From: Klebsormidium nitens
Taxonomy: Eukaryota; Plantae; Klebsormidiophyceae
Assembly (NCBI GenBank): GCA_000708835.1
Contig: DF237273.1
Span: forward strand, 1 to 64,000
Direction of reading: 5' to 3'
DNA: 64,000 nt
The notes under the pieces are model-generated. The model ran no database searches and was not told where the DNA came from. It saw only the letters and a program-made list of their open reading frames with translations. Positions 1 through 24,175 of this stretch are shown in pieces (within the stretch, counting starts at the first letter, position 1; every line of letters begins with the position of its first letter). The translations under genes were made by a program, and so were the position numbers.

Positions 1-1330
1 GTTTGCGGCTCTTCCAGGGATGATCAGTCTTGTTCCAAAGTCAAAATCTGGGTCCTATGCGATGCTTGTGCTTATCATGGAAGGCAAGTTTTGACTGCTG
101 GTCGGCGTCATCAACTACAAGCTTCTGACAGGCATGATTGGTCTCGTTTTAAAAAGTCAAATTTTGGGCCTTATGCGATGAAGGAGCTTATATTGAAAGG
201 AACTTTTGACTGCTGGTGGGCGCCATCAACTACAAGCGTCCGACAGGAATGGTGGGTCTGGTTCCGGAGTCAAAAGTTCGGCCGTTAGGAGCTGCAATGC
301 TTTGATCTTGAAAGGAACTTTTGACCGCTCGGCTCAATAAACACAATATTCTCTGGAATTTTGCAGGGGATGGTCGACCTTGCCTACGAGTCAAAAGTTT
401 TGTCAGGAAAGTCTGATAAGCTTATACTCATGAGGGAAGTTCTGACTCCTTTGCGCAATCATGCACAACATTCCTTGGAATTCTGCAAGGGATGGTCGAC
501 CTTGCCTACGGGTCAAAACTTTTGCCATGAAAGCCTGAGATGCTTTATCTTGAGGGGAAGTTTTGACTGGACCGCACAACCGCTCACACTATGCTTCAAG
601 ATTCTTGGTGGAATGGCCGACCTTGCCTATGAGTCAAAGCTTCTGCAACGAAGTTCCGAGATGCTTTATTCTGGGAGAAAGTTTTGACTCAGACCGCACA
701 ATCGCACAGAACGACCAAAAATGATGGGTGTAATCAGCGGCTTGGCAACGAGTCAAAACTTCTGTCTGGAGATTCATAGAAGCTTATACCCACGAGGGAA
801 AATTGAAAGTCTGAGATGCTTATATTGGAAGGAAAGTTTTGACTGGTCGGCGCCATCAGTCACAGCGTGTCTCGGATCTAGAACGGAATGGCCGGCCTTG
901 CCTGCGAGTCAAAAGTTGGGCCGTTAGGAGCTGCTATGCTCATACTGCGAGGGGAAGTTTTGACTGGTCAGCGCCATCAGTCACAGCGTGTCTCGGATCT
1001 AGAACGGAATGGCCGGCCTTGCGTGGGAGTCAAAAGTTGGGCCATTAGGAGCTGCTATGCTCATACTACGAGGGGAAGTTTTGACTGGTTTGCGTTGTCA
1101 GTCACAGAGCATTTCCCGGAGATGAAAGGATTGGTCGGACTTGGCTGCGGGTCAAAAGTTGAGCCGTGGAAAGCTGGTATGCTGATGCTACGAGGGCAAC
1201 TTTTGGCTGCTGGTTGGCGGAGCGCCATCCATTACAAGCTTCTCGTAGGACCCGGATGGTCGGTCTTGTATCGAACTCAAAGCTTGGGGCCTGATGAAAC
1301 TGAGAGGAACTGCCAATATGACCAGAGTGC
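1..1330 (+). repeat. Array 1 of the ~120-bp double-hairpin repeat family (~11 units; begins before the window)
   Basis: AGTCAAAA-type arms start at about 39, 155, 268, 389, 511, 632, 751, 907, 1028, 1150 and 1274 (spacing mostly 113-124 bp). Each unit reads AGTCAAAA(G/C)TT..ATGCTTATACT..GAGGG(G/C)AAGTTTTGACT, then GGTCGGCGCCAT..variable..GATGGCCG(G/A)CCTTG. Confidence 0.95.
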
Positions 1331-1385
1331 TTGGATGAAACCGCTTTGAACTGATGCAATTCTAACGAGGCCCTTTTACTTGCAG

Positions 1386-3932
1386 GTATGGTCAAAAAGT
1401 GCAAATGCGTGACACAAAGAGCTCAAGTCTGAATCGTGCGCACACGGCATACTACAGAGCTCCACGAAGCAGTCCGATGGCCAGGGGACGTCTACCAGGC
1501 GCAAGGTCAGTCTTCACCAGCCACACATGGACACATCGGATACTTGCACTCGTCATCTGTAGCCTCCAGATACATGCAAACCTCGCCAATAGACCTTGCT
1601 TCAGCATGAATATCGACGTCGGCATCCGCTTCAGCTTCAGGGTCGACGGGGTGGAAGAGCAGGTCATGAAATTCAGCGACTATAGAGGCGAGGTCCTGAT
1701 GCTCAAAGCCCCCCTTGCTCATGAATCTTCGGAACAGATGAGCCCAATTCAGGTTGGTCGTCTTGCAGCATCTGCACATCTCGCGAAGATGGCGGATGGT
1801 GAGATTTGCTGCATCGTAACTGAGGTCACTGCCCTTTCTCTTTGCAGGAAGACGGCATCTTCAACTTTTCCGGCACCAACCTCATCTCGCACGGCCTCCT
1901 CTTGCGCAACCACTTTGCGGCGGCCCTGGGGGCGGCCCACAGCCTCAACTTTGAGGCGGGGGACATGGCGACGAGGTGCCTCGAGGGGCCGAACGTCCCT
2001 ACGCTGGACGACCGGGTGTTCGACTCGGCGATGCAGGCCTTCAACGACCTGGCGGCACGGTCTCAGATCCGTCACGTGTGCTCGCGCGTCGAGTGCGCGC
2101 ACCTCTACACGGGCGAGGTGGAGGCGGCCGAGGCGTAGGCCCGAATGGCTGGCAAACCCCCGAGGCCGGAGCGAACGGAGGGGCCGAGCTCTGAGCTGGC
2201 CACGTACGCTTTTGGGCGGGACAAGGTCATCACCTTTGATGGGACATTCTTTGCCAACTCGAGCGCGATGCGAGACTCCGGCACGAAAGCGTCCTTGCAC
2301 AGCATCTGCGAACCGGACCCGAAAGCGCCGAGGGTCTCTGGGGGCTTCACTCCTCTGAGCGTGGGCGGGGTACGACCTTCGGATGTGCCCTTGGAGGGAA
2401 TCGACTGCCCCTGGAAGTATAGGAACGGGCTGTCAGAGCTTAGACCAGCGGTGCGAGCTTTTGCGCTGAGGTGGTGCAACTTTCGCAAGGCTCCAGCGCA
2501 AGGGAACAACGCGCCTCTGAAGCTGGAGGAGTTCGTCGCCATGCGAGAGGGGCTTCCGGCGAACGTCGCCGCTCTGATCGACCTCGTGACGGAGTCGGGA
2601 GCTTGTGGCGATCCTGCCACGTGTGCGATTTGCAAGGCGGTGCCGCGGCGACCATGGATGGCAGGGTTCCTCAAGGACGGGCCCGTGGGAGCGACCGGCT
2701 GGTGCCCGACGCACTTTCAGCCGTACGGAGCCCTCCTCCACGCGCTGCTCATCCCCCGCTACTCGTGGGTTTTTGGGCACGTGGTCACGCTAAAGCTGCT
2801 GAGACACGTGCTGTTGGAGGGCCCTCTTTACGAGCGCGGACTGGCGTACCTCTCGAACGACGGCCCCATGGTGGCGGCCATCTTGCGCCTCCACCCCGTT
2901 GCCGGGGGGCTGTATGCCTTCCCACCGACGCTCCGTCCGCTCGTGCGCGACATCTATGCCACGAACCTCCTTTGCTTCGAGCCGAGCGCAAACCGGCCCG
3001 GTCCGTCCTCGCGATCGCCTCTGGCCGCTCTCCATGATGCTACCGAGCATCTGTGGACAATCGAAGCCGAGAGGCTGAGGCTCATGGGCCAGCTTGAGGC
3101 GGTCGCAATGGAGTACGTGGAGCGGCGAGGGGCGGCACTCAAGAGGGTCGCCAACTCGCTCCTGTTTGAGCTGGAGGTTCGCGAACCCTCGTGCTACAGC
3201 GGCGAAGAGTTCCTTCGAGCGCCATCGGCCGCTTATGAGGAGCGGGTCGGCGCCGTTTCGGTCTACTCTTTTCACCCCCTGCTGTATGGGCGGCCGCAGT
3301 TCACGGATTGGGAGGACGCTTCGGGTCGCGGGAGAAAGGGTTCCGAGGAGCGGCTCATGCAGCACTGCAGTGCTCCAAACCGCCGCTCGTCAAAGGGGCG
3401 CGCTGGGGTGTTCATCGCATGCTGTCAGGATCGAGCGCCCTTGGGGTACCACTGGCTGAAGGGCGGTGAGAGCGTCTCGGACCTTGGGACGGTGCTCCTG
3501 ACGCGGTTCCCTTTCAAGACGCTGCGGGGCATGACCATCGTGGAGGACGCCGCTTGCAACGCGCAGGAGTGGTTCTTGAACCGGGTGCCTCAACTGGCCA
3601 AGTTCATGCTGTTCGTCGTCGACCGCTTCCACTCGGGTCCCGTGAGCTGCGCACCGGCGGGGGCGAAGCGCTACGCGACGCATACGTGTGCGTCTACGCT
3701 TTTCATCGACTCCTTTCCGCAGCATGGCCACACAATCACAACCGCGTCGGAGGGCATCAATTCTGGGCTGAAGAGATGTGCAGCTAGCCTCCTGCAGATC
3801 ACGAGCATCAAGAGGTTGATAAGCCGTGTGACGACCATCCTTGACACGCTTTTCGAACGGTCGAAGTATGCTGTCTATTGGAGCGAGGCTAGCAATCCGT
3901 TGAGAGACTTGATCAGGCGGGCGCGAGGCTGA
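1386..3932 (+). pseudogene. KDZ (Kyakuja-Dileera-Zisupton) transposase, spliced, one in-frame TAG
   Basis: ORF 2145-3932 has VITFDGT, GVFIACC..LGYHWLKGGES, IVEDAAC..WFLNR.P, FVVDRFH..H.C and TTASEGINSGL, matching KDZ core motifs. Upstream ORF 1842-2138 (EDGIFNFSGTNLISHGLL, CxC5-like) is in the same frame, separated by TAG 2136-2138. A phase-0 GT-AG intron at 1753-1847 joins it to ORF 1399. The 5' end is uncertain. Confidence 0.78.
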
Positions 3933-3941
3933 CGTGCGGCC

Positions 3942-4615
3942 TTATTCCTCTATTACTCATTACCCACCGTCTCAAGTTCCATTCTCTTTGTACATTTGTC
4001 ATGTGGTGATGGAGGCTTTGCAAGAGGTTCCATATTCAAATAATCAATGGGTAATAGAGTAATAGGGTAACAGAGATGTGTGCTTGAGGCTTCTTCATGG
4101 GTACAGTCATGTGTGTGTGTGTGTGTTATAAGATAATGAAGGGGTAATAAGCTATTTGGTACTCAACGACTTCAGGAAGGTTTGTCTTTCTTGCTTTCTC
4201 GGGTCAATATGTGCCCCTCCTCATCCCTTCTCACCACCAACATATGACAGCTGGAGCAAGGGTAGAATCATGATGGAGCGATGCTGCTGATCTCCTGTAT
4301 TACTCGTTACTCTATTACCACTGTCTCAAGTTCCATTCTCTTTTGTACATTTGTCATGTGGTGATGGGCTTTAGAAGAGGTTCCATATTCAAATAATCAA
4401 TGGGTAATAGAGTAATAGAGTAATAGAGATGTGTGCTTGAGGCTTCTTCATGGGTACAGTCATGTGTGTGTGTGTGTGTGTTATAAGGTAATGAAGGGGT
4501 AATAAGCTATTTGGTACTCAACGACTTTAGGAAGATTTGACTTTCTTGCTTTCTCGAGTCAAACAATGTGCCCCTCCCCATCCCTTCTCACTACCCACTC
4601 ATGATGATTCGAGCA
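3942..4615. repeat. Tandem ~355-bp duplication; each copy has an inverted repeat of GTAATAG(A) iterons and a (GT)n tract
   Basis: 3942-~4260 aligns with 4298-~4615. TATTACTCGTTACTCTATTACC (4298-4319) pairs with GGTAATAGAGTAATAGAGTAATA (4403-4425); the first copy has the same arrangement at 3942-3965 and 4049-4070. Confidence 0.93.
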
Positions 4616-7333
4616 AAACGAGCACTTTTGCTCTGCGGCGGATTGTCGCGACTCTTTTGACTCTTTTGAAGCATCAACAAGCTCCTGAAGAGCTTTGGAA
4701 TCTGTCATCCATGGCCCTTCTTCATCCTCGGTATAGTCGAGCCGTTGCCAGGTGTCTACCCATTCCACAGTCGAGCTCATAAGCTTGCCTTTATGGAGAG
4801 CCTCGCAGATAGCGCCCTGTGGGGCAAACCACCATCCCTTATGGGTTCGAACCCCCTGAATGGAGCGTGCCTGCGGTCGCATATTGAAAACGGCATTGAG
4901 AGAGCGCATCAAGACGTTGACGCCGGTATGGCGGTCTTCTTTGATGTCCATCTGATGCAGGAGCGTGTCATAAGTCCGCTTGATGTCTGTCGATGCTACC
5001 CACGTCTCCAAAGAAGGGTGAAAGCACCCGTTCTCGAGCAGCGCTTGCATCATATTGACGTGGGGTGGAATGGAGTGTTCTTTAAGGCCTTCCCCCCAAG
5101 TTGTGACTGGCATCTTCTGAGAATTCCAATTGGATATTTCAATGGATGATAGATATCGATGGAGGTGATATGCGGTCTCGGGTTTCTCCAACTGCTCCAC
5201 GAGCTCATCAAAGTATTGCTTGTTTCCCATCTTGGCATCTGAGACTTGCTGGCAAGAGTATCGGCGATCGTCTGCCTCTCGTTTGACAGACCAAAAGTTG
5301 TTTGTGGTGAAGACGATATTGCTTTTGTCATCCACGCTGATAGGGTCTTGGCCTTTGCGCTCCATACACGTCGTCTCCTGAGTGATTAGGGACTTTATCC
5401 GGTCGTTCATCCGATACGCTCCGCCCCAACTGCCACATTCGTCCAACACAATCAACAACCTGTTGGCTGCTAGTGAGTTGAATTTGCCAATGATCTTTTC
5501 GATTTCGTTGCAATACAAATAATATATGGCGCCAAGGATCATCCGTCCAAAAAAGTCCCACAATACAGACTTTCCGCACCCTTGCCCACTGCGAAACACG
5601 AGAGCGACACCAATCTTCCTCCAAGGCTTCTGAACGGCGTGCGCCATCCAACGAAGGTTGTAGTCAAACCGCTCCTTTGAGCCATCGCACAAGATGTTGC
5701 GGAGGTGCCACATGAGCTTTGGCATCTGTTCCTCGCACTTCACGAGCTCCGACTCCGTCAATCTGCGGTCGAGCGGTTTGAATTTCAGCCCGGAGAACAG
5801 ATTGAAATGTCGTGATGACCCCTTTGACGGGTCCGGCTCGAATACGATTCGATCGTATTCCCGGCGTTTAGGACTGCTCTCCCAGAATCTGGCAACCTCC
5901 TTGCTTTTTCCAGGTAGGCTCTGGAGTTGGAAATTCCCGCAGACCTCCAAAAAGTTGCGGCCGGACCGAGCGATGGTCTCCTGGGGCTGAAGCTGCCCAT
6001 TCTCGTCTCTCGAGTAGATCATTTCCAGATAAACAGCCTTTGTCGAGCGGACAACGGCAAAGTAATGGTTCATGATACGCAAATCGAGATCGAGCAAGTC
6101 CAGTTTTGCTTTCCTTGTTCGTACGTCATCTTCCTTTTTCTTCCTTTTCTCGTCGCTTTCATCCGTGGACGGCTCGAAGGGAAGAATGTAGCTCTCGCAA
6201 GTCTTGAAAAGTTCCCCTTCCGCTCTCAGAGGCAAACACTCGGGCCAAAAGTGAATGCCCAGCAGTTGCTTTGGTCGATCAATGCACCCTGGACTGAGAC
6301 AGCGGTACACAAGAATGCATCCGTTGCTCATGATGCTAAACTGGTTCGAATCGTGTTGATGACCATTTAAGCAAGTTCGCGTGCCGTTTGTTTTGAACTT
6401 TAGGATCTGCCACCCATTAGGGGTCATTTCTCCAACACCGTTGAACGTGCCGGTGTCGTCTTGCACCTTATCACGCAGCAACCTCTTGATCTCTTGGAGC
6501 GCGCCTTCCAATCCGGGCAGGGCCTCCGTGTTTTGCACATTTCCAAGAGGTGCTGATGACATCGATGTTGAGTTCTCAATAACAGGTGAGGTGGCATTCG
6601 AGTCATTCTCACGTGACATGTGCTTATTTGATGTCTCAATCTTGTCTGTTGCGGTCTGTTGAACGTGATCGTTGAGAAACTTTGCAAGCCAGAGAGGCAT
6701 GTCATGGCATGCATCAAAGCTTGGAGGCCCGTTGAGCCATTGGTATGTTGCAAGCTTTCCCTGATCCTTGACGTAGCTTGCGGGGTGAGCATAAACGACT
6801 CCTCCACCAGCTCGACCGTCAATTCTATAGACAGTGTTGCCAACCTTGATGGTCTCAAAGTTACGGGTGCATTTGAGGCCAGGCGAAGTCGCCTTGAAGT
6901 AGAAATGAAGCCCGCCAGAACCTGTTTGAGCTTTGAGTGTTTGGGGCTCGCCATGTTCCTTAACAAGACGGTTCCAGAGCTCGATTCCCGGCTTTTTGTT
7001 ATCTTTGTTGGACACATCAATATCAATCACAAACACCCGACTGGGACGTGTCAGGATCGCGACTCCATTGGCGTCCTTCCTCTGCCGCATTGCTTCATCG
7101 ATCGAATATTTCCACAATTCGGGCGTCGTGATGTGTGCGTACTTGTGTGGAAAGTCGGCACCTTTCGTACCCTCTTTTTCATTCCAGAACATGCGCACGG
7201 GAATTGCATAGAGCCCAACATTGGAGAGTCGTTGAATCTCGTCTGCAATGGCTCGGGGCCCTACGGGCCTGGGGACATGAGCGGCCTGAGGTTCTGAGAG
7301 GCTGGCCTGGGCGTCTGCCATTTCTTTGTACAT
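4559..7333 (-). CDS. Primase-polymerase (bifunctional Prim-Pol-like AEP) + Zn-binding linker + D5/NrS-1-like SF3 helicase, 924 aa, intronless
   Basis: VFVIDIDV and QTGSGGLHFYF primase motifs; C..GHQH...RCLSPGC; Walker A FRSGQGCGKS; Walker B IVLDEC; motif C FTTNN; ADDRRY. Confidence 0.9.
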   Translation of the reverse strand: MYKEMADAQASLSEPQAAHVPRPVGPRAIADEIQRLSNVGLYAIPVRMFWNEKEGTKGADFPHKYAHITTPELWKYSIDEAMRQRKDANGVAILTRPSRVFVIDIDVSNKDNKKPGIELWNRLVKEHGEPQTLKAQTGSGGLHFYFKATSPGLKCTRNFETIKVGNTVYRIDGRAGGGVVYAHPASYVKDQGKLATYQWLNGPPSFDACHDMPLWLAKFLNDHVQQTATDKIETSNKHMSRENDSNATSPVIENSTSMSSAPLGNVQNTEALPGLEGALQEIKRLLRDKVQDDTGTFNGVGEMTPNGWQILKFKTNGTRTCLNGHQHDSNQFSIMSNGCILVYRCLSPGCIDRPKQLLGIHFWPECLPLRAEGELFKTCESYILPFEPSTDESDEKRKKKEDDVRTRKAKLDLLDLDLRIMNHYFAVVRSTKAVYLEMIYSRDENGQLQPQETIARSGRNFLEVCGNFQLQSLPGKSKEVARFWESSPKRREYDRIVFEPDPSKGSSRHFNLFSGLKFKPLDRRLTESELVKCEEQMPKLMWHLRNILCDGSKERFDYNLRWMAHAVQKPWRKIGVALVFRSGQGCGKSVLWDFFGRMILGAIYYLYCNEIEKIIGKFNSLAANRLLIVLDECGSWGGAYRMNDRIKSLITQETTCMERKGQDPISVDDKSNIVFTTNNFWSVKREADDRRYSCQQVSDAKMGNKQYFDELVEQLEKPETAYHLHRYLSSIEISNWNSQKMPVTTWGEGLKEHSIPPHVNMMQALLENGCFHPSLETWVASTDIKRTYDTLLHQMDIKEDRHTGVNVLMRSLNAVFNMRPQARSIQGVRTHKGWWFAPQGAICEALHKGKLMSSTVEWVDTWQRLDYTEDEEGPWMTDSKALQELVDASKESKESRQSAAEQKCSFCSNHHEWVVRRDGEGHIV

Positions 7334-7810: not shown

Positions 7811-8866
7811 TCAAAACTGTATCCGAGTTCCATCAGGATTGAATTTCTTCTCATATGTCCGCTGTGCCATAGCTGCCGTGTGCAACATGCTCCGCGCGAG
7901 GTCGTCGCGCTCGGCAATGCTCGGAGCATCTTTAAAGAGGTTGCTGACGCAAATTTTGCGAAGGAGACACGAACCCACACTCGCGTCCTTAAAAAGGCCC
8001 GTGCTACAAAACTTGGTCAGATAGTTTCGACTCATCGGTTTGTCGGGCGACTTAATCTGAGACAAGAGGTATTTTCTGGGAAAGACCTGAAGGCTTTCGG
8101 CAATGACATTGTTGCATCGGGTCGACATGTCTATCGAAGTGGGTCCGTGGTGCTTGACGGTCTTATAATCGTTCAATACCAAACGAAACTGATCTTGTGC
8201 AATCTCTAAGAGATAGTTTCCGGAACCGGACATGATCTCACGTACCTCGGCCGTTTTGATGTCCTTCAAGCGCACAATGGGGCAATCGCTGTAGTCATTG
8301 CGGATTGCTGGTTGATAGCTATAAAGGCACAGTATGAGGTGGCGAAAAAGCACAAATTTGTCCTCATCGGTCAATTCTTCGGGCCTCTTGTGCAGGATCT
8401 TACGGTTCACGTGCCTTTGCAGCTCCACTCGGCGATCACTTATCTGATTGAGTGTCTTCCAATTGGCCGCTTCCCGCTCTGTCAGCTGCTGGGGAGGAGG
8501 CTTCGCATCTTCCATGAGCTTACGAACCTCTATGTACCGCTTGTAATAGGCATCATAGAGCTGTTTATCGTCGGAGAATGCTTTGCGCACTAGAACCAAG
8601 AGCGGATTGATCCCAGTGGCCTGCATTGACAGCTTTGTGGAATATGTTTCCTGAAAGTACTTGATGATTCCGTCGGCATCCTTGATCCAATCGAAGCTGG
8701 TGAAGTCTCGTTGTCTTTTGAACCCTTGAAACAAGCGCACGACATGCTTCATATATTGTTGAATCGTCAGGTCCTTTCGAGTACCATCCTCGAACGCCGA
8801 GCGCAGCAGCCTTTCTCCCTGGGTTACGGTGATTATGCGTCTCGTGGTTTCAACAGACCCTTGCAT
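7811..8866 (-). CDS. Tyrosine recombinase/integrase, 351 aa
   Basis: Catalytic residues in the expected order: PAIRNDY (R), DYKTVKHHG (K), CLLRKI (HxxR-like), LARSMLHT (H/W), AQRTY (Y). Confidence 0.88.
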   Translation of the reverse strand: MQGSVETTRRIITVTQGERLLRSAFEDGTRKDLTIQQYMKHVVRLFQGFKRQRDFTSFDWIKDADGIIKYFQETYSTKLSMQATGINPLLVLVRKAFSDDKQLYDAYYKRYIEVRKLMEDAKPPPQQLTEREAANWKTLNQISDRRVELQRHVNRKILHKRPEELTDEDKFVLFRHLILCLYSYQPAIRNDYSDCPIVRLKDIKTAEVREIMSGSGNYLLEIAQDQFRLVLNDYKTVKHHGPTSIDMSTRCNNVIAESLQVFPRKYLLSQIKSPDKPMSRNYLTKFCSTGLFKDASVGSCLLRKICVSNLFKDAPSIAERDDLARSMLHTAAMAQRTYEKKFNPDGTRIQF

Positions 8867-9133: not shown

Positions 9134-9682
9134 TTATCTGGGCGACGTGATTTTAGAGACTTCGTTAGCAATTCGAGCTTTCAGCGGGTTCGCAAGCATC
9201 TCGAGTCCCAAAACTGGCTCGTTGCTGTCCCAGATTACGCTTGGGGTGCAACGTGGTGATTCAAAAGACGCATTGCTATCCGTGTATTGAGGCAAAGCCA
9301 TCTTGCTTCCTCGATGCTCCGAGGTAGATCGCGATCGACGTTCAATGCGGCGGTTCTCATGATGAGCATATTTAGCATCTTTCAATGCTGTTCGCCAGCT
9401 TACAACTACGGAATATGGTCCATGGATTTCGAATTTGTCCCAGAAGGCGTCGAAGCCATCTTTTGAACGGGCACGAACCAGAGCTTTGGTTATATGCTTC
9501 AAATTATAGGGAGCAGCAAGTGCACGAAGGCCAGCAAGGGTGCCCACATCCAATATCGTATCATGCATGTTGAATTCCTTGTAGCAACGGATGATTCTAG
9601 TCTTGGCTGCGTTCAGAACCATTCTATCCATCTCTTCGATGGTTGCATTTGTTGATGGCCGGTATTTGAGAACAATATCCAT
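9134..9682 (-). CDS. Hypothetical protein, 182 aa, in the recombinase/primase module
   Basis: ATG-initiated intronless ORF, co-oriented with the recombinase; no recognised motif. Confidence 0.5.
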   Translation of the reverse strand: MDIVLKYRPSTNATIEEMDRMVLNAAKTRIIRCYKEFNMHDTILDVGTLAGLRALAAPYNLKHITKALVRARSKDGFDAFWDKFEIHGPYSVVVSWRTALKDAKYAHHENRRIERRSRSTSEHRGSKMALPQYTDSNASFESPRCTPSVIWDSNEPVLGLEMLANPLKARIANEVSKITSPR

Positions 9683-9923: not shown

Positions 9924-10300
9924 TCACGGCCCGTAGTGACCCCTGCCTCGATTGATGCGATGCACTCTCGCCGCCATCCCCGACCCAGTGCGAACTGGTG
10001 CAAAAACGGTATGGTGTTTGATATCGCGTCCGACAAATCCGAGAGGAGTCTCACAATCCGCCAGGACAAATATGCCAATAGCGTAGGTGTCATACCCGTT
10101 CCCCGAATGCTTGCGAAGCACGAGCTCCTGGCTGGGTCGAAGCTTGCGAACGAGGTCTCGACGGCCTTCAAAGCTGACTCCAACGGCTCGAAATAGCATG
10201 CGTCCATCTGGAAGCTGCTCCATTGGAGGGTTGGCCCAAGGTTGGCCGGTGTATTCAGCCAAGCTCTCTCCTAAGTATGTATGCGACCCGCGAGCTTGAA
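9924..10300 (-). CDS. HIRAN-domain exon, probably part of a larger spliced gene
   Basis: FRAVGVSFEGRRDLVRKLRPSQELVLRKHSGNGYDTYAIGIF...LGFVGR matches the HIRAN pattern (VAGV.F...L.REP.N.YD.NAI.V...GYVP). Candidate AG acceptors lie near 10270-10297. Confidence 0.75.
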
Positions 10301-10439
10301 GGATGAACAACTTCGAGCTATGTGCTAGATTATCACACCGACAAAGCGCTCGGCATGGTTGAGGGGGCGCCCGTCGACTTGCACCATCGTGATATACAAA
10401 GAAGCCTTCACAACAACGCAAATTGACGGCTCCGAGCCG

Positions 10440-11959: not shown

Positions 11960-12055
11960 CCTTATGCAAGAGACACTTCTTTTTAAGGCAGGGAGAAGGC
12001 AGGGCAATGCAAGAGACACTTCTTTTCAAGCAGGGAGAAGGCAGGGCAAAGCTGA
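11960..12055. repeat. Short tandem duplication (AGAGACACTTCTTTT..GCAGGGAGAAGGCAGGGCAA x2) in a predicted intron
   Basis: Two ~42-bp copies visible directly. Confidence 0.85.
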
Positions 12056-14100: not shown

Positions 14101-15014
14101 TTTGATTTCGTTCAAGGTCTGTACGCGAGCTACCAAACACGACGTTCGTTCCTGAAGCTTCAAAGTTGCGTCCAGGTGTGAAAGGGTTTTCTTACTGACG
14201 AACTCACTATGACGTGCTCGCCTCTCTGCAGGGACTCCATCGTCTCAGCAATGGCCGGGCCGTAGGGGTCCTTTTGGAACCGCTTGGTCGCCGGGATGTA
14301 CTTGATCGTGGCCTTCCGTTCACCCGGGTACACCCCGCGGTTGCGGATCGTGTGCAAGGCAGCTTCTGGCCGGACCATGTGCAGCCACTGCATGACCCGG
14401 GGGCTGCCGATGTTGGCGTCCATCCCGAGCACAATCTTGGCATGCCGCGTCACCCCTTCCAGCGCCAGAAAGACCATCTTCTTTCGGGCCATGACGTCCG
14501 AGTTCATGTTGGACAGGATCATGTCCATCTCGTCCATGATGACCACGTCAAAGCTGGCGGCCAGCCTGGGGAGGGAGTTTACGCAGACAACGACCCTGCC
14601 GTCGTCAATCCTTCCAGTCACATCGAGGTAGAGCGTCGCCTCGATGCCGCGCCGCGTCAGATCCTCCGCATATTTCCTGGCGAGTGTGACGTTTGCTGCG
14701 ACCATGACGAAGTTTGCAAACGGAAATCTTTGCAGCAGCCTCTCTAGCCAGTCGTTCCCCTCCTTCGATTTGCCAATGCCCTTGTTGGCCGACGTCAGGA
14801 TCGTTTTCCTGGCAGGGGAGTTGATGGAGAAGGGCGGATAGGGGCGCATGCCGTCCACCTTGACGTAGTCCTCCGTCCAGCCCGTGATTTGCCCCGTCTC
14901 CAAATGGAGCAGACGTGCGATTCCGCTGCAGAACGAGAGGGCACACGACACCTTATTTACAACTCTTTATGATCCAACGACCGTTCTAGCTCGAAGAAGA
15001 GGGATTCATAAACG

Positions 15015-15470
15015 GAAGGGATGGCCGGGCTTGGCTACAAGTCAAAAGTTCCGTCGTGAATACCTGGAATGCTTATACTCACAAGGGAGGTTTTGACTGG
15101 TTGACACTGTTAGTCGCAAAGGATAATCAAAGACGGAGTGGCGGGGCTTGGCTGTGAGTCAAAAAATCCGCCGTGGAAAGCTGCAATGATTATACTATGA
15201 GGGCAGGTTTTGACTGGTCGACGCCATTAGTCACAAAGTTTCACGAACAACAAGGGATTGGCCGAGCTTGACTACGAGTCAAAAGTTCCCCCGTGGAGAG
15301 CTGCAATGCTTATACTCTGAGAGGAAGTTTTGACTGGTCGGCATGTTGATCACAGAGGCTAGTCCCGAGACGAAAGGAATGGCCGGACTTAGGCTTCGAG
15401 TCGAAAGTTTAGCCGTCAGAAGCTGCTACCCTTATATCATGAGGGCAAGGCTTGACTGATTGACACACAA
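15015..15470 (+). repeat. Array 3 of the ~120-bp repeat family (4 units) inside intron 14926-15680
   Basis: Arms at about 15040, 15157, 15277 and 15399; antisense to the host primase-helicase transcript. Confidence 0.95.
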
Positions 15471-18293
15471 GTGGCGAACAGATCCTACATTCGACCCTGA
15501 GGTATCTTGCATCATCTCACGACGCTAGTGACGGAAGCTGATTTGAAAGCATAAACTACGGCGACTCGGTTCCGATCTCGACCTTCCAGCCTGGGGCCTC
15601 CGAAAACGTACTTCATGGGACCGTTGCTCGGAAGGTGGGAAATCAAATCAAAGTGATTCCCGTTGCCCGTGATGGCTCACCTGCAGGTGGCGGAGTGGCA
15701 CTTGTAGAATGCCACCCCCGGCCGGGACCGGCGGTAGAGCAGGTACGTGTTGTTGTTGCCCGGGGACGTGTGCGGACGGCCAGCGAGGAGACATGTGGGC
15801 TCCGGCACGTCGAAGTGGACCGTGAAGACCCCCGAGCCGACGACGTGAACGCGCGCGAGCGTAGCGCCGGGGTGCTCCTGCTGATAGTACTCCACCAGCA
15901 CGCGCTGCTCCTGCTCGCCCAGGTCCGCCCGATTCTGCCCGCCATCTTCCGGGAGGCCCGCATCTCTCACGCGCATCGTGGGGCGCTGCGGCCGCGACAA
16001 CGTGGGGGCGTGCTGCTGGAGGTACGCCTCGAGGCGCGCCGCGTCTAGCTGGGCGCAGCACTGCAGCTCCGCAGCCGAATAAAGCCCCGCGAGGTGGTCC
16101 ACGATGAGCTCCGAGCTGCCCTCGCTCGGCTCGAGGACGCGGTCGCTCCCCTTTTTGCTCGACCACAGCATACGCCAATTCTGGAACTTGGAGTAGACCG
16201 TGCCGTCCCAGATCAGCTTCGGGCGGCCCCGCTGATCCTCCGTCCAGACGAACTCGGCGCTGCGCGCCAGATGGGGGGGCGGGTTCTTCTGGAAGTGGTC
16301 GAACGCTTTTGCAAACAGGCTCCGCGCTCGGCTATCCTCCAGGTAAAACCCCTTGAGCACCCCGTGGACGCTGTACCTGAACCCCCCCGCGACTGCCCCA
16401 TGCGCCGTGCTCTCCTCGAACCGGACCGCCTCTCCCAACACTCCCAGAACCGCCTCCAGAAACCCATCCCTCAGCCGCTCAAAGTGCTGCTTCCGCTCAG
16501 CAAAATCTGCATCCCGCGCCCCGACCGCCTCCTCGGAGTCGCCCGCGCACACGCTCAAAGGCACGTAGTAGTCCAGGCCGAAGTAGAGCAGCGAAGGTGT
16601 CTCTTCGAGCAGACACTCGTACCGGTGCTTCCTCTGGCCCCTGAGGCGTGCGCAGTAAGCCAGCAGCGCAGGGACGTCCGGGAAGCTGGTGAACATCTTC
16701 GCAGCGGAATCTCGCGCGGAGTCAGCGGCGACGACGATGCCGTGGCCGTGGAGGGTCTTCCAAGCCACGGCGAGATCCTTGGGGCCCCGGCCGGTCGGAC
16801 TCTCCTTGCTCTTGAACCACTGCTGACCGTAGACCGCCGTCGTGTGCCTCTGCAGAGTTGGACAAATGCCATCAGGAAAATGTGCGGCTGATCGTGCGAC
16901 TGATAGAGCTTCGGCTTTCAAGTGTGGTCCTCAAGCTCAGTGAGCCCGTGCAGAGTTGCAACGACAGATCTAAGTCAAACTCTCGGACTCAGATTGTCAA
17001 CCAGGGGAGCGATAGTCGTCCGAAAGCAGGGATGGTATGCACAAGTGCTGCAAGAGAGACCCGTGTCTGCCCGTGCTTAATCCTCAGGCAGCGAGGTATT
17101 TCTCGGAGGAAATGAAGCATCTCCTTTCTATGCCGCTTTCATTTAGTGTTCTCGCAGCCGAGAAAAGGTCGATGTACACCAAACTCGAGTGCTCAAAAGA
17201 CCATGTGGCCGCTTTAGACCAAAGGTAGATTACCGATTCGAAGTCGCGCACGCTCTCACCAGCAGACTGCCAACGGAGTCTTGATCTCTGGTTGGAGCTA
17301 GCTCGGTCGTATCCTGCCTGGCCTCCAACCCCATTTCCTGCACGCAAACGCAGACCTTTATGAGCACGTGCGCAAAAGACGGACCTGGAGATCCTCTCGT
17401 CCGCGGCGTCGAAACTAGACAACGCCCAGCAGTACAAGCGTGCAACTTTCCGATTGCGGACGATGTGATGCAAAAGCAAGGGCGGCCATCACACCTGGCA
17501 GCGCGCTGACCAGCAGCCAGGCTGATCTTGATTTCATCTGGCATGCTTGCCGAATTTAACGACCAGATCCGATCGGTCTGGTCGACATTTGGACGAACAG
17601 CGCGACTTCTTGTCGCACGCAAGACCTTTGGAATAGCTTCCAACATCATTCAGTAAGAGTGATCCTCTCTGAGAGTTGGGACATGAAATCCGGATGCTTA
17701 CCTGTACAATCGGAGCCCCGCCCACAGGATGATGCTCGGCAAGCTCCCCGGCGGGAGGCTCCGGGTTCTCCTCGGGCGCATCCTGACAATAGACTCTTGC
17801 CGCGTGAAGTTCCTGGGCACATGCACATGATGACATGATTGAAAGAGTGGAGCCTGCAAAAACCCTAATCATGAAGATATTGTTTGTGAACCAACTTTCA
17901 GAAGAGGAGAAGCGGGCGCGCGCCTCCGCGAATCGCGCTCCAGAGGCCCGGCACTTCCTACTAGACATGAGAACCGGGTTCTGAAGTGCTCGAGTTGAAC
18001 CAGAGGTGTTGCTTCTCACCCCTCACTGATTGCACACACGCAGCTGGCACCGGACTTCTCTTTCGAAGGCAATATTACACGTGTGGCAGCGCCCGAGTTG
18101 TAATGCAGCTTACCGTTTCGCACGGGCTTCCGGTCCTCTAGAACCGGAGGGCGCTGGGGAGCTCTCCCTGCTCGAGGAGGCCCTTTTTCTGTCCGCGACC
18201 TCCTGCACACAAGAACCAGGCGCTCGCTCGATTCAAGAAGGGTGTCACACAGGCTTAGGGGGAACGCTTTGGCACTCCAAGGGCATCGGAATC

Positions 18294-18894: not shown

Positions 18895-19215
18895 CTCGCC
18901 GCCAGCAGTCAAAAGTTCCTCTCAGTATAAGCACGCTCTTCGTAAACAGGCCCCGAGTTTTGACTCCGAGATGAGGTCAACCATCCTTGTTTGAGAAGCT
19001 TGCGATTGATGGCGCCGCCCGGCAGTCAAAAGTTCCTTTCACAATAAGCACGTTTATTGCACAAGGCCCAAGGTTTTTGACTCTGACATGAGACCGCCAG
19101 ACTATCCCACTCAAGCGTTTGAACAAAAGCGCAGGTCAGTCAAAACTTGCCTCTCAGTCTAAGCATATCAGCTTTCAGTGGCGCACCTTTTGACTTGCAG
19201 GCAAGTCCGTCCATC
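18895..19215 (-). repeat. Array 4 of the ~120-bp repeat family (3 units)
   Basis: Arms at about 18907, 19024 and 19138. Confidence 0.92.
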
Positions 19216-19222
19216 CTGTCCA

Positions 19223-22200
19223 CTACTGTTGAAGCTTGAGCCGGGACCAACGAGGAGCGTATGCGACCCAGAACTCGGTGCTCACCCGACTGATAGTCTG
19301 GGGTCGCAGACGCGGCACGATCATGCACAGATTTGTAAACTCCTCCCCAAAGTCCGATTCGTCGAAGCCGCCATCGTCTTCGGGTTCTAGCGGACCGTCG
19401 GAGCTAGCGCTGGCGTCAGGCACGAGCACATCGCCCCCCGGGTGCTGCACCTCCTCCTCCGACCCAGCAGCACCGCTCCGCCTTGCCGAAACGCTGCCGT
19501 TCTCACCCGAGGACTCCGATGATGGGAGCAGCACCCGACGGCGCCGCCTGGTTTGTGGAGAGGGGGTTGCCTCATCACAAACCCGCCGCTTTCGGAGCTG
19601 CTGATGAGCCTGGGCAGCCGCCCACCGCCCGTTGCTTGCGGAAGAACCCTGCGAAGGGCTGCCCTCCTCGGCTGAGCACTTCGACCGGAGAGGCAGGAGA
19701 CGGGCTCCCGGCTTGAAGCCCTGAGCCTGAAGCTGAGAAACGTCCAACTCGGAGTCGGATTCCCTGGCGGCACGAAACCTGCCTTGCGCAACCACCGGAT
19801 TCTCTTCGTCTTGACTTCCGTCGTCGATCATGAGGCGATCTTGGGATGTCTCCACGTCCCCAGATTCGCCCACGCTCTCAAACTCCGCCCCCTCAATGTC
19901 CTCGCCTTCTTCTTCAGATCCTGATCGCCCAAACCCGGACTCACTGGCCGCACTCGTCGCCGACCGCTGGTTGCCGCCGCTTTTCTGGACGAAGGATGGG
20001 CCTTTTGTCAGAAATTAATCAAGAGACGTCTTCTGCAAATCAGCGCCGAGGGCATCCCGTGGAAGCAAGGCAGGCCGTCATCACGAATTGTTGACGTGGT
20101 CCAAAAGCTTCAGATAGAACCTCAAATGTTTCTTGCAGCGCGTGGACTCTGACCATCTGGAGCCAACCCAATCTGAAAAGGTCTCGCTAAAGAGACATGC
20201 GAGGAACAACGAACGAGTTCAACACATTCCTTGCTGGGAACGCATCACAACCACTCAAAATCTCAGCAACACTAGCATTGCCGAATCGCAGTTCTGGCCC
20301 TTGAAGCAGATCTCAAACGAACCGCTTTCGAGATGCGTACAACTTATACAGCTTGAACGAGCTCAGATCAATCCATAGTTCTCACCTCTGCTGTGGCGCC
20401 GCAACCCTTGACTGCAGCGCCAGCTGTCTCTCCCAATGAAGTGGACAGCCGGTCCTCTTCGTCTGCTCTGTTGTCTTCCACCTTGAAAGACGATGAGTGA
20501 CATTCGATCAGAACATGCGGAGCACATTCTTACCACAATTTCAATAAGCATACAACCAGCGTATGCAAACCAGTGTCGCAGCACTCCACCCTACTCACAG
20601 TCTTAAAATACGAAGTGCAATGCAAAGCAAACGAACGTCGCCAATGCGCAACAGATGATCAATGCAAAAGGCTGGCCCTCACATATCATCCAAGGTGATA
20701 ATGAAGACCTACTTTGGCACAATTTGCAGCACGACATTTTTCGAAAGCCAGCCCCTCGAGTCGCCTTAAAGACTCGGAATGCTTTGACTTCGTTAGTCGA
20801 GACGAAATGCATCCGTGGCAGCTTCCGATCGTGGTGCTAGAGCAAAGATACACATCTTACCAGGGCAGTCAGGAGGCCGTCTTCTATCCTGTCCAAATGA
20901 CTGAGCTCTCTCTGGAGCAATTCCGCGTCCGCCCTCGGCATCTCTTCCGGGAACTCGGGCCTTTCGATGCCCCCTGTCACCACGCGGTCAGATGCTCGAG
21001 AGGCAATGCCTCCCTTCGAATCTGCAGGGCTGGGGTCCACCTGGAAAATGGAGAGGTGAACGGGTCAACTTACACGCATGAGCAGGTGCTCTGAGGAGTC
21101 ACCGCGCAGCTTTCTCGTTGGCACAGTTGTGGCAAAACTACTGTCCCTATCAATTGACTTGCAAAAACGCGATACCCATGTTTCCTGCAACAGCGATGAG
21201 TGGCCTGGGACGAGCATTGGAAACGTCTTCGATCACTGGATCATGGGCGCCTTAACTGTTATGCGACAAGTGTTAAGTGCTTACCTGCTCGTAAAGCTTC
21301 CCATTCTTCTGCCACTTCTCAAACTCCTCAGGAACAGCGCGCTGACCACATGCCGGCCGCCAGCTCTGTTCGACGTCCTGCACAACGGCCTCTCTTCTTA
21401 CCATCAGGTTTCGTCTGTGGGTTACGAGTTCAGATGACGCTACCATTCCAAAAGCAGAAAGAAGTGATGCGACCGCAGAACGGTCTGACAGGCTCAAGCA
21501 AAGCTTTGAAGCAAAGCACTGCACTCGTTGTTGTAAACTATCACAGAGCCGTGCTACGAGTTGTTGAGTCAGCATGGGCTCGTCCTCACCTCTCGAGAGG
21601 GCAAATTCACAAGCTGACGGCAAGGGCTGACATCAGGTGCAGGTGCGTCCTTATTCTCGTTTCCCTGTGATTGGAGCGCTGGCCCAGGATTGCTTTCGAC
21701 GCCGCCGATCAGCAGAAGCTTTGCTGCAAAATGAATGCCAATGATGGACAAGCGAGCCAAACCGACAGTTCAGGTCATGAAAGAAGCAGATGGCGTGCAC
21801 GCCTCTGTTGACGGACCACACCTTGTCAATAATAATAAAGAAACCCACTCTCAGCACTTTAAGGCCATGTGCAATGTGTGGTCCAGCAGACTGTCAGACC
21901 GGCTATCCGGTCACACTCTTTTCGGCCAAACAGAAGAAGGGCAGCTACAAGCAGCCCGCACCTATTTGATAGAGTGACTCACCATTGAGGAGCTTGCTCT
22001 TGGGGGTCGCATCCCACCTGAAGTTGTCATGCTGATATCCGTCGCATGCTGTGGAAGATAGGCAAACATATTGAGTTGGCACGTGAGTAGGCAAGGTTTG
22101 GTTTCAAGCTCGACAGGATTCTCTTTGAGAGACATCGTAGAGGTGGGGTTTCAGGATTAGGAGAGACCAAGCAAAGTACAAGCAGCAGAACAGTCCATTG

Positions 22201-24175
22201 GGAGTAAGATTGTGCAATGAGTCCGGGATCAACAAGCAAGAGTCAGCTTGCTCTTTGCCCGAGAAAACCTCACCATGCCTACTCCCGAGCTCTGCCTCCT
22301 CGTCAAGCGCCCGCGCTAGCTCTTTCTTCAACTTGAAAGCTTCACAGACACGTGCCCACTCTGGAAAAAAGGCACGATGCACATGTCTTTGCGATAAGCG
22401 CTTACATGCAGGAGAGTCGTTGGCTTGTCGACGACAGCCAGCATGCCTGCTCAGTCTCAAGATTTGCATTTGCAAACTTGCATGGTTGGACCAGGCAAGC
22501 TCTTTGCCAAATGATTGACGGCGCGCCGACACAGCGGTAGCCGCATAGAACTCACCTGCCCGGGCCTTCTCAATCTGGAAGCAGCGAGTTCTGACTGGGC
22601 GATGCGCACCGCAGAAGCACTTGAGGTTGCCCCCTTCCTTGCCTCCACGCAGCGCATAGGTCGCGGGGTTGCTGCATTCTCCGCAAAGGAGACCGTGTGG
22701 AACTGGAAGGGAAAGCACAAACAGTCGAAACCAGTTCGGAAAGCGTCACGCATGTAAAGTCCTGGTTGATTCATGCGTACCTTCTCATATATCCCCGGCC
22801 ATACACACAAGAGTCTTGTACAGTTGCAAACTCCTAGACCTAAGGCTCAGATGCCCTCCCCCAAAGCGCTGACTCCGACTCCCGCAAGGCCCTATTAAGG
22901 TGCTTCATCAAGATGGCCCTATTAAGGTGCTGCTGCTCACCCTTGGCCCCAAAGAGGTAGCTGGCCAGTAGCTCCTTTGCTTTCCTCGCTTTCCTGGAAG
23001 CGCCACCAGCTGGGGGGCGGGCCTGGCTCGTTGCCGCTGGGCTCGCGGCCGCCGGGCTTGCGGCAGTCCTGTGAGCTCCACGGGAGGCGCTTGCTGGTCG
23101 CTGCAGCCCCTCCATGTGGGCCTGCCTGATCGACGTCAAGACCTTCTCGAAGCCCTCTTGCAGGCCCGCGTCTGCAGTGCCCGCCAGCGCCTGGAGACCA
23201 GCCATCGCGGCATGCAGGCTCCCATCCCAGGCAGCCTTCGACCAGAGGAGGCCTGCAGACCCGAGCTCCTCTCGAGCGCGCTGGCACAGGGTTCCCGCCA
23301 CCTTCCGGAAGATGCGGTGGCCTCTCTTGGAGTAGGTGAGGAAGCCTCTGGCCGCGCTCGCCACGAGCGCTCTGATGGCCGCCGGCGGGAGAGCATCATC
23401 GCGGGGTGGGCCGCATGTGTCCTGCAAGGAAGCCAAGGGGGCACGATGCGTCAGACCTCATGTCATCTCGAAGGAGCGAGCAGACACTTCTTCATCGGGT
23501 GAAAGCCAGTGCACAACTCTGATGAGAAGTGCGGTTGAGGGCAGAATCGGGCCAAGGCCATTCAACCCATCATCCTGAGCATTGAGACCGACCAGTCAAA
23601 ACTTTCCCTTAAAGTATAAGCATTCCAGATTTTCACGACAAAACTTTTGACTCCCGCCCTGGCCCTCATCCTAACAGTACTGTAAGGGTTAGCGATGGGG
23701 CCAGTCAAATTTTGCCCCATGAATATAAGCATTCCAACCTTTGAAGGCAGGACTTTTGACTCGCATAGCTCCCAAGCCAATCCAAACCGGGATCCTGAAC
23801 AAGCGGGAGCGCCCACCAGTCAAAACTTCCCTGAAGAGTATAAGCATTCCAGACTTTCACGACAGAATTTTTGACTCCCGCCCTGGCCCACGCGTTGTGA
23901 GAGGTAGCGCTTGGGGCCGTCAAAATGTGCTCCATGAATATAAGCATTCCGGACTTTCAGGCAAAGTTTTTGACTTGCAGTCAACCTGGCCATTTATCCC
24001 ATGATCCTGAAGATCTTGTTAGCGGCATTCAAGACGCTGGCCTTACCCCAGTCCTCGCAGGACCAGCTTTTATCTCCGCGCCACTGTTCGCGCCGTAAAC
24101 CACCTCATGCATGGGGTGGGGCGGGGGGGTGCTCGAGTTGGGTGCGGCAGCAGATGAGCGCGTTGCTCCACTTCC
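19223..24175 (-). other. Run of exon-like segments of one or more uncharacterised spliced genes of the element
   Basis: Minus-strand AG/GT-bounded open segments near 24175-24047, 23425-22941, 22703-22557 (Cys motif), 21725-21589 (2A-like), ~21420-21290, 21040-20862, 20480-20390 and ~19990-19223 (acidic/basic low complexity). Connectivity is not established. Confidence 0.45.
23585..23997 (-). repeat. Array 5 of the ~120-bp repeat family (4 units, alternating dimer structure)
   Basis: Arms at about 23594, 23703, 23818 and 23918; unit 1 resembles unit 3 and unit 2 resembles unit 4. A GG|GTAAGG donor lies upstream at ~24046. Confidence 0.93.

What the first reader, a model, noticed from the sequence alone, without database searches (positions are those of the whole stretch)
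1..24000. Dispersed family of ~120-bp double-hairpin repeat arrays threaded through a transposon/virus-like region
Seen: five arrays (1-1330, 10440-11235, 15015-15470, 18895-19215, 23585-23997; about 29 units; both orientations), and none noticed in the host half of the window. Each unit has two stems. Stem 1 is AGTCAAAA(C/G)TT..AAGTTTTGACT around a ~36-nt loop with conserved TGCTTATACT. Stem 2 is GGTCGGC(G)CCAT..ATGGCCGACC around a variable loop. The arms stay conserved while units diverge strongly elsewhere, which suggests selection on structure or protein binding. Inference: a cis-acting or ncRNA component of the element, with three alternatives. (a) Replication origins/enhancers analogous to baculovirus hrs, bound by the adjacent UL9-like origin-binding protein. 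(b) Recombination sites for the adjacent tyrosine recombinase or KDZ transposase. (c) Processed structured RNAs or guide arrays.
Basis: partly seen in the sequence, partly recalled or inferred. Interest (0 to 1): 0.92.

Follow-up and report, generated by a model that had tools for sequence, protein, structure and literature searches.

The report
Origin-like repeat arrays in algal element
A large mobile element in the green alga Klebsormidium is threaded with arrays of ~120-bp repeats that look like docking sites for one of the element's own replication proteins, much as insect and animal DNA viruses mark their replication origins; this has not been tested at the bench.

Summary
The arrays are real. 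A profile of the unit finds 30 units in five arrays between 10 and 24036 and none in the other 40 kb. Only "stem 1" holds up: an 8-bp inverted repeat (AGTCAAAA / TTTTGACT), 95-97% conserved, with a fixed 41-46-nt spacer of lower GC. "Stem 2" is no more conserved than its surroundings. There is no covariation, no excess folding energy and no Rfam match, so this is a split protein-binding palindrome and not a double hairpin.

The host is Klebsormidium. The element carries a KDZ-like transposase, a PrimPol-SF3 helicase, a tyrosine recombinase, a UL9-family helicase and a PrimPol-like protein. Related elements keep arrays at the same positions, but the arm sequences differ between lineages. The arm family follows the UL9-like helicase module. 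It does not follow the KDZ, tyrosine recombinase or PrimPol-SF3 genes.

Best reading (confidence 0.45): hr-like or iteron-like cis sites, acting as origins and perhaps enhancers, recognised by a lineage-specific replication protein, most likely the UL9-like helicase. Recombinase sites and structured RNA are disfavoured.

Limits: few lineages, possible linkage between arrays and helicase, and no genome-wide scan.

The parts
1..1305 (+). Array 1: at least 12 units of 109-122 bp, cut by the window start. It is the positional equivalent of the terminal array in relatives.
   Evidence: Equivalent to L003 18465-19669 and L001 21042-21729.
2145..3932 (+). KDZ-like transposase gene: an intact 595-aa ORF.
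   Evidence: No direct Pfam hit. Residues ~350-560 match proteins (E 1e-15 to 1e-8) whose matching region is Pfam KDZ PF18758, often with CxC4.
4559..7333 (-). PrimPol plus DUF5906 (SF3, NrS-1-like) primase-helicase gene: an intact 924-aa ORF.
   Evidence: Pfam PF09250 at 3.4e-15 and PF19263 at 3.8e-19. PHROG DNA primase families. Klebsormidium nitens homologues at 65-90% identity.
7811..8866 (-). Tyrosine recombinase gene: an intact 351-aa ORF.
   Evidence: AF2 model with pLDDT 83. Foldseek top hits are Cre, XerA, XerH and TelA, with prob 1.0 and E 4e-6. R189, K235, R303, H329 and Y338 are invariant or nearly so.
9134..9682 (-). Small conserved ORF (182 aa) of unknown function.
   Evidence: 35-46% identity to the syntenic ORF in relatives. 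No family hit.
9924..10466 (-). ORF (180 aa) with a weak HIRAN likeness. Its 5' end runs into array 2.
   Evidence: Pfam HIRAN E 8.8e-4, below the gathering cut-off. Syntenic hits in relatives. L249 has a HIRAN gene.
10438..11249 (-). Array 2: 7 units, downstream of the UL9-like gene.
   Evidence: Equivalent to L003 6407-6839. The near-identical copy L253 has 8 units.
11387..14966 (-). UL9-family (Herpes_ori_bp) SF2 helicase gene. In the window it is read as four ORF pieces with three interruptions: one in-frame stop and two gaps that may be introns or breaks.
   Evidence: Pfam PF02399 at 3.8e-13, 48.9 bits against a cut-off of 20, on ORF 14160-14951. PHROG 4913 'replication' on two pieces. 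The K. nitens relative is a 1301-aa multi-exon model. 78-93% identity to L003.
15013..15457 (+). Array 3: 4 units, directly upstream of the UL9-like gene.
   Evidence: Equivalent to L003 2403-3002.
15677..16921 (-). PrimPol-like (AEP) protein gene: an intact 414-aa ORF. The assignment is weak.
   Evidence: PDB profile hit to human PrimPol 5l2x/7jk1 at E 0.0035. Foldseek top 10 hits are human PrimPol, but the model pLDDT is only 49. Found only in L003, L253 and L249.
18907..19250 (-). Array 4: 3 units.
23551..24041 (-). Array 5: 4-5 units. The 98%-identical copy L253 has 13 units.
24263..24596 (+). Array 6: three ~110-bp units of a sister repeat family with arms around TGCAC / TGCA. It probably comes from another lineage of the element.
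   Evidence: Same family as L247 8415-9359 and L248 8691-8931.

Best explanation
The arrays are cis-acting stacks of binding sites on double-stranded DNA for a sequence-specific protein encoded by the element. The most likely binder is the UL9-family helicase, through its fast-evolving C-terminal region. The arrays would work like baculovirus homologous regions, plasmid iterons or herpes-type origins.

Each unit offers two inverted 8-bp half-sites at a fixed distance across a spacer of lower GC. A dimeric initiator could bind the half-sites and open the spacer. The dispersed arrays would then act as multiple origins, and possibly also as enhancers of the neighbouring genes.

Shown: the anatomy of the unit, its conservation, the shared positions of the arrays in relatives, and the co-variation with the helicase module.
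Inferred: binding, the identity of the binder, and origin or enhancer activity.
For: 1. Selection acts on the arm sequence, not on pairing. Arms are 0.95-0.97 conserved against 0.59-0.77 elsewhere. Arm identity is equally high between arrays kilobases apart (0.93) while the rest of the unit falls to 0.52.
2. The geometry is fixed within each family. Arm spacing is 41-46 nt in family A, 38-39 in B, 39-40 in B2 and 30-33 in C. Spacer GC is 0.35-0.47 against 0.51-0.59 in the rest of the unit.
3. Relatives keep 103-126-bp arrays at the same intergenic positions, but with different arms. Both arms change together and every array of an element carries that element's own arms.
4. The arm family follows the UL9-like helicase. 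The helicase core is 89% identical between window and L003 (same arms) and 77% between L002 and L245 (same arms). It is 55% between those two and L001 (related GTACC arms), and 33-49% or undetectable for all other pairs.
5. The helicase C-terminal region diverges faster still and shows no detectable similarity between arm families A and B.
6. The other proteins do not follow the arms. KDZ is 71-91% identical in all pairs, and the window's closest relative at 91% (L247) has different arms. The recombinase is 89% between window and L002 (different arms) but 71% between window and L003 (same arms). PrimPol-SF3 is 63% between L002 and L245 (same arms) but 78% between L002 and L003 (different arms). 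This holds domain by domain.
7. Two relatives with recombinase and PrimPol genes but no UL9-like gene within 10 kb on either side have no arrays.
8. Unit number differs between 98%-identical copies: 13 against 4, and 8 against 7. Baculovirus hrs are known to vary in the same way (general knowledge).
9. From established knowledge: herpesvirus UL9 binds inverted sites flanking an A+T-rich spacer, and baculovirus hrs are dispersed palindrome-bearing arrays that serve as origins and enhancers.
Against: - No binding or replication data exist.
- Only four arm families in six informative loci.
- Arrays 2 and 3 flank the helicase gene, so linkage may explain part of the co-variation. A 'backbone' history, in which only the KDZ-PrimPol-recombinase block was exchanged between lineages, would also make neutral sequence follow the helicase.
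- In the window's own family the spacer is only mildly GC-poor (0.47 against 0.54).
- Known herpes-type origins are single palindromes, not tandem arrays.
- The window's UL9-like gene is not one open frame.
- Another protein of the same lineage-specific module, such as the 414-aa PrimPol-like protein, could be the binder.
- The genome-wide distribution of the unit could not be scanned.
Confidence: 0.45

Rival explanations
1. These are the subterminal and internal repeats of a giant KDZ-type DNA transposon. In this reading the arrays are binding sites for the transposase or a helper protein, like the subterminal repeats of CACTA/En-Spm elements, or they are sites for the tyrosine recombinase, and they serve excision and integration.
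For: The element carries a KDZ-like gene and a Cre/Xer-fold recombinase. The largest array lies 200-700 bp from the conserved terminal segment in relatives, where homology to other copies ends and a host kinesin gene follows. In the window, arrays 1 and 5 are the outermost and are in inverted orientation. Giant KDZ elements of 10-30 kb with accessory genes are known in algae (PMC12477816).
Against: KDZ proteins 85-91% identical, and recombinases 89% identical, sit with unrelated arm sequences. The ~140-bp terminal segment shared by all lineages is a better substrate for these shared enzymes. Three of the five arrays are internal. A 30-46-nt spacer does not fit the 6-8-bp crossover region of tyrosine recombinase core sites (established knowledge).
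Confidence: 0.15
2. These are arrays of binding sites for a different element protein, used for transcription (enhancer or promoter arrays) or for tethering and partition of an extrachromosomal form. EBV oriP family-of-repeats and plasmid centromere-like sites work this way. Initiation of replication is not involved.
For: All arrays are intergenic and lie 5' of at least one gene. The spacer holds a conserved, oriented motif containing TATAAG. Array orientation is conserved between the window and L003. Tandem multiplicity suits cooperative binding.
Against: The TATAAG strand does not point consistently toward the adjacent gene (orientations set against the ORFs). No dedicated DNA-binding regulator was identified among the ORFs. 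The co-variation with the helicase module holds equally under the main explanation.
Confidence: 0.15
3. This is a fast-turnover satellite with no function. Tandem repeats were seeded in intergenic DNA of the element and homogenised by unequal crossing-over and gene conversion. The inverted arms are an accident of the founding unit.
For: Copy number differs between 98%-identical copies. Units diverge strongly (mean column identity 50%). Different lineages carry different sequences.
Against: Homogenisation would keep whole units alike. It would not keep two 8-bp arms at 0.93 identity across arrays while the rest drops to 0.52. Four families independently keep inverted arms with fixed spacing and a GC-poor spacer. 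Array positions and orientations persist across lineages down to 53% PrimPol identity.
Confidence: 0.12
4. The arrays are transcribed into structured or processed RNAs: hairpin RNAs, guide-like arrays or small-RNA precursors.
For: Stem 1 is predicted as a hairpin in most single-strand folds. Two sister families fold better than shuffles (z -2.7 and -2.8).
Against: No Rfam family matches. RNAalifold keeps 5 pairs at -0.63 kcal/mol with no compensatory change. For the named two-stem structure, 78.9% of cells pair against 79.3% in shuffles. Window units have z from -1.2 to +0.95. Arrays lie in both orientations relative to the genes.
Confidence: 0.06

Closest known systems
Baculovirus homologous regions (hrs)
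   Same: Several arrays are dispersed in intergenic DNA of one element, in both orientations. Each unit carries a palindromic protein-binding core. Sequences are specific to the lineage, copy number varies between near-identical genomes, and arrays sit at the borders of recombined blocks.
   Different: Units are 105-126 bp. The palindrome is split by a 30-46-nt spacer. The host is a streptophyte alga. No baculovirus gene family was found in the ORFs scanned. The binder is unknown.
Herpesvirus-type origins bound by the UL9 origin-binding protein
   Same: The element encodes a UL9-family helicase (Pfam PF02399). Each unit has inverted arms flanking a spacer of lower GC. The arm family follows the helicase.
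   Different: There are tens of tandem units in five arrays in place of one or two palindromes. The spacer is longer. The C-terminal region is not alignable between the element's own lineages.
Iterons of plasmids and phage P4 (ori and crr bound by a primase-helicase)
   Same: Repeated short sites occur in direct and inverted order, in two or more separate clusters, matched to the element's own initiator. Specificity groups differ between relatives.
   Different: Here the PrimPol-SF3 helicase does not follow the arm family, either as a whole or by domain. The element is eukaryotic.
Subterminal repeats of CACTA/En-Spm and giant KDZ transposons
   Same: A KDZ-like transposase gene is present. The largest array lies next to an element end. 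The element is over 24 kb and carries accessory genes, as reported for algal KDZ elements (PMC12477816).
   Different: Arrays also lie deep inside the element. The arms do not follow the transposase.

Membership tests
Baculovirus hrs | Several dispersed arrays of one repeat family within one genome or element | tested here: met
   Five arrays with 30 units in 24 kb. Relatives show the same.
Baculovirus hrs | Each unit centred on an imperfect palindrome | tested here: inconclusive
   An inverted 8-bp pair is present but split by 41-46 nt. It is not a contiguous ~30-bp palindrome.
Baculovirus hrs | Resident in a baculovirus genome, with a baculovirus-type transactivator as binder | tested here: not met
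   The host is Klebsormidium. No baculovirus family appears in the Pfam or PHROG scans of the ORFs.
Baculovirus hrs | Origin and enhancer activity | not testable with these tools
   No functional data are available.
Herpes-type origin with UL9-family binding protein | The element encodes a UL9-family SF2 helicase | tested here: met
   PF02399 at 48.9 bits against a cut-off of 20. Relatives have a 1301-aa protein with PF02399.
Herpes-type origin with UL9-family binding protein | Inverted binding sites flanking an A+T-rich spacer | tested here: inconclusive
   The inverted arms are present. Spacer GC is 0.35-0.47 against 0.52-0.54 for the locus, and only mildly lower in the window's own family.
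Herpes-type origin with UL9-family binding protein | Specific binding of the helicase to the arms | not testable with these tools
   The only evidence is indirect co-variation.
Tyrosine recombinase core site | Inverted arms flanking a 6-8-bp crossover region | tested here: not met
   Arm spacing is 30-46 nt in all four families.
Tyrosine recombinase (the 351-aa protein) | Two-domain Cre/Xer fold with conserved R-K-R-H-Y residues | tested here: met
   Foldseek prob 1.0 to Cre, XerA and XerH. R189, K235, R303, H329 and Y338 are conserved. There is no direct Pfam hit.
KDZ transposase (the 595-aa protein) | Match to the KDZ catalytic domain | tested here: inconclusive
   There is no direct Pfam hit. 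Homologues at E 1e-15 to 1e-8 carry PF18758 in the aligned region.
Transposon subterminal repeats (CACTA/KDZ type) | Repeats confined to the ends of the element and matched to its transposase | tested here: not met
   Three arrays are internal. KDZ proteins 85-91% identical occur with unrelated arms.
Structured non-coding RNA family | Match to a known family, compensatory changes, or stability above shuffles | tested here: not met
   No Rfam hit. No covariation. z from -1.2 to +0.95.

The most novel reading that the evidence does not exclude
Klebsormidium carries an undescribed family of giant elements that can replicate themselves. They combine a KDZ-like transposase and a tyrosine recombinase with two primases and a UL9-type initiator. 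The dispersed repeat arrays are their origins. Initiator and origin co-evolve into distinct specificity groups, in the manner of plasmid incompatibility groups, while the integration and primase-helicase block is freely exchanged between the groups.
Probability: 0.3. Interest if true: 0.8.

Novelty: new variant of a known kind. Interest (0 to 1): 0.62.

Why it matters
If the reading is right, a relative of land plants hosts a multi-copy element of over 24 kb that joins transposon-type integration genes to a virus-type replication module. That module would use hr-like origin arrays whose specificity changes together with a UL9-family protein.

This would extend the arrangement of a palindrome-bearing array plus a matched initiator, known from baculoviruses, herpesviruses and plasmids, to a new kind of eukaryotic element. 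It would also give a natural series of matched protein and site pairs for studying how DNA-binding specificity evolves.

Full-text searches found no description of this element family or of its arrays.

Tried and rejected
1. Scans of metagenome contigs and viral contigs with AGTCAAAA-N36-50-TTTTGACT. The pattern was too loose for collections of that size. The question of whether the unit is a genome-wide satellite therefore stays open.
2. Exact look-up of the window's PrimPol protein: not on record.
3. IMG/VR search for relatives of the PrimPol and recombinase proteins: none found.
4. Direct Pfam and PDB sequence searches of the 595-aa and 351-aa proteins found nothing. The assignments came only from a predicted fold and from transitive homology.
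5. The AF2 model of the 414-aa protein has low confidence (pLDDT 49), so its PrimPol likeness is weak.
6. A search of the window for an inverted copy of the relatives' conserved terminal segment found none. The right end of the element is undefined. L253 proved to be a near-identical copy or allele that stays collinear out to 25821, so it gives no boundary.
7. Rfam search on the terminal segment: no hit.
8. The TATAAG motif in the spacer as a promoter: its orientation relative to neighbouring genes is inconsistent.
9. PrimPol-SF3 as the binder, by analogy with phage P4: rejected, because neither the whole protein nor any of four segments follows the arm family.
Full report
**Observation**

TRF reports 115-121-bp tandem units in arrays 1, 2 and 3. 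A profile built from actual units finds 30 units at 10-1302 (+), 10451-11249 (-), 15014-15454 (+), 18910-19234 (-) and 23597-24024 (-), and none in the remaining 40 kb. The arm motif occurs 50 times against 2.6 expected. The paired-arm pattern occurs 15 times against none in 100 shuffles.

**What a unit really is**

In an alignment of 25 units, the outer 8 bp of the two stem-1 arms (AGTCAAAA and TTTTGACT) are 0.95-0.97 conserved. Every other segment, including the proposed stem 2, lies at 0.59-0.77. Arm identity is 0.92-0.93 within and between arrays, while the rest of the unit falls from 0.60 to 0.52.

The two-stem structure pairs in 78.9% of cells, against 79.3% after shuffling partners, so there is no covariation. 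The ninth position of stem 1 is mismatched in 19 of 25 units, and the outer helix of stem 2 pairs in only 59.5% of cells. RNAalifold keeps five invariant pairs at -0.63 kcal/mol. As single strands, window units fold no better than shuffles (z from -1.2 to +0.95). Rfam has no match.

An 8-bp repeat around a ~43-nt spacer would not be expected to extrude as a cruciform from duplex DNA (general knowledge). The unit is therefore best described as a split inverted repeat with fixed spacing. Spacing is 41-46 nt, and spacer GC is 0.47 against 0.53 for the rest of the unit. It is not a double hairpin.

**Host and element**

The 924-aa ORF at 4559-7333 (-) is a PrimPol plus DUF5906/SF3 primase-helicase. 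Its relatives at 65-90% identity are multi-copy proteins of Klebsormidium nitens and of two JGI samples.

The 351-aa ORF at 7811-8866 (-) has no Pfam hit, but its model (pLDDT 83) matches Cre, XerA, XerH and TelA with probability 1.0. R189, K235, R303, H329 and Y338 are conserved. It is a tyrosine recombinase.

The 595-aa ORF at 2145-3932 (+) is KDZ-like by transitive homology.

The span 11387-14966 (-) holds a UL9-family helicase (PF02399, 48.9 bits; PHROG 4913). In the window it is read in four ORF pieces with three interruptions: one in-frame stop and two gaps that may be introns, since the K. nitens model is multi-exon.

The 414-aa ORF at 15677-16921 (-) is weakly PrimPol-like.

**Relatives**

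Window 1842-18744 is collinear with L003/L004 at about 80% nucleotide identity. L003 carries the same unit family at the positional equivalents of arrays 3, 2 and 1, in the same relative orientation.

Other lineages (L001, L002, L245, L247, L248, L249) have 103-126-bp arrays at corresponding positions but with different arms. These are built on TGTACCA, GTACCCA or TTTGCAC, and each is again inverted, with a family-specific fixed spacing (38-39, 39-40 and 30-33 nt) and a GC-poor spacer. Each locus contains only its own family in all of its arrays.

In relatives, the largest array is followed within 200-700 bp by a ~140-bp segment conserved across all lineages. Homology stops after that segment, and in K. 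nitens a host kinesin gene follows. This array is therefore subterminal. The window starts inside it.

**Which protein goes with the arms?**

Pairwise identities of the best single HSPs give the following picture.
- KDZ is 71-91% identical in all pairs. The window's closest relative (L247, 91%) has different arms.
- The recombinase is 89% between window and L002 (different arms) but 71% between window and L003 (same arms).
- PrimPol-SF3 is 63% between L002 and L245 (same arms) but 78% between L002 and L003 (different arms). None of its four segments follows the arms.
- The UL9-like helicase core is 89% between window and L003, and 77% between L002 and L245. It is 55% between those two and L001, whose arms share a GTACC core. 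It is 33-49% or undetectable for all other pairs.
- The helicase C-terminal region is 66-69% between L002 and L245, and 34-37% to L001. It has no detectable similarity to the window, L003 or L249.
- Two relatives with recombinase and PrimPol genes but no UL9-like gene within 10 kb have no arrays.

**Interpretation**

Three observations together are the signature of a cis site matched to a trans-acting protein:
- strong purifying selection on two short arms at a fixed distance;
- uniformity of the arms across all arrays of one element;
- concerted replacement of both arms between lineages.

The exclusion of KDZ, the recombinase and PrimPol-SF3 is fairly firm. The positive assignment to the UL9-like helicase is only consistent with the data. 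Arrays 2 and 3 flank that gene, and a history in which only the KDZ-PrimPol-recombinase block (window 1842-10286, bounded by arrays 1 and 2) was exchanged between lineages would give the same pattern. The conserved terminal segment is a better candidate substrate for the shared integration enzymes.

By analogy with UL9 at herpes-type origins and with baculovirus hrs (established knowledge), I propose hr-like origin and enhancer arrays, with confidence 0.45.

**Other points**

L253 is 97-98.6% identical to window 5756-25821 but has 13 units in array 5 where the window has 4, and 8 units in array 2 where the window has 7. The arrays therefore expand and contract quickly.

A sixth array at 24263-24596 belongs to the TGCAC family of another lineage. 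It suggests a remnant of a second element next to array 5.

**Limits**

- There are four arm families in six informative loci.
- The right end of the element is undefined.
- The genome-wide distribution of the unit was not tested, because my collection scans were badly designed.
- No expression data were available.
- Full-text searches found no description of this element or its arrays. Giant KDZ elements with accessory genes are known in other algae (PMC12477816).

While working I noted, in my reasoning, the place of one interruption in the UL9-like gene. The printed labels and one notebook entry give the bounds of ORF pieces and of a repeat inside that gene. I have not repeated those places here and have deleted nothing.

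Profile HMMs of the repeat unit were built from actual copies for searching only. 

All comparisons of the UL9-like gene were made ORF piece by ORF piece.

Noticed in passing
window 24263-24596: Three ~110-bp tandem units of a sister repeat family (arms around TGCAC / TGCA, as in L247 8415-9359 and L248 8691-8931). They lie 220 bp to the right of array 5 and are probably a remnant of another lineage of the element.
   Followed up: partly
L001 22125-22262; L003 20250-20388; L247 10066-10204; L245 20657-20796: A ~140-bp segment conserved across lineages that have different arrays. It lies 200-700 bp outside the terminal array, and homology ends right after it. It is a likely element terminus or attachment sequence. 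There is no copy in the window and no Rfam hit.
   Followed up: partly
window 1842-10286 against L001 and L002: Mosaic structure. The KDZ-PrimPol-recombinase block is about 80% nucleotide-identical to lineages whose helicase module and arrays are unrelated. The block is bounded by arrays 1 and 2.
   Followed up: partly
L253 (JGI 3300060285, Ga0590115_0002479) against window 5756-25821: A 97-98.6% identical collinear copy or allele. Array 5 has 13 units against 4 in the window, and array 2 has 8 against 7.
   Followed up: yes
window 13367-13779: Direct repeats of ~105-170 bp carrying CCACGTCAG, of a family unrelated to the arrays, inside the span of the UL9-like gene. L245 has a 195-bp repeat with TGACGTCA-type motifs at 17438-18095.
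   Followed up: no
window 4014-4562: A 353-bp tandem duplication with a (TG)n run, between the convergent KDZ-like and PrimPol genes. It is also present in L247 2494-3149, and as double matches in L001, L003 and L005.
   Followed up: no
L002 5555-6397; L245 5227-6426; L001 6348-7511: The C-terminal part of the UL9-like protein is Pfam DUF8368 in the GTACC-arm lineages. It has no detectable similarity to the C-terminal ORF pieces of the window, L003 or L249.
   Followed up: partly
window 29946-30662 (-): An ORF with a weak NACHT/STAND NTPase likeness (E 1.1e-5, just below the Pfam cut-off) in the non-element half of the window.
   Followed up: no
window 62818-62907: 32-bp tandem repeats containing TTAGGG, with a nearby 61-nt inverted repeat pair at 62656-62716 and 63498-63558.
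   Followed up: no
window 26356-26750: A tandem duplication of ~200 bp at 92-96% identity, to the right of the arrays.
   Followed up: no
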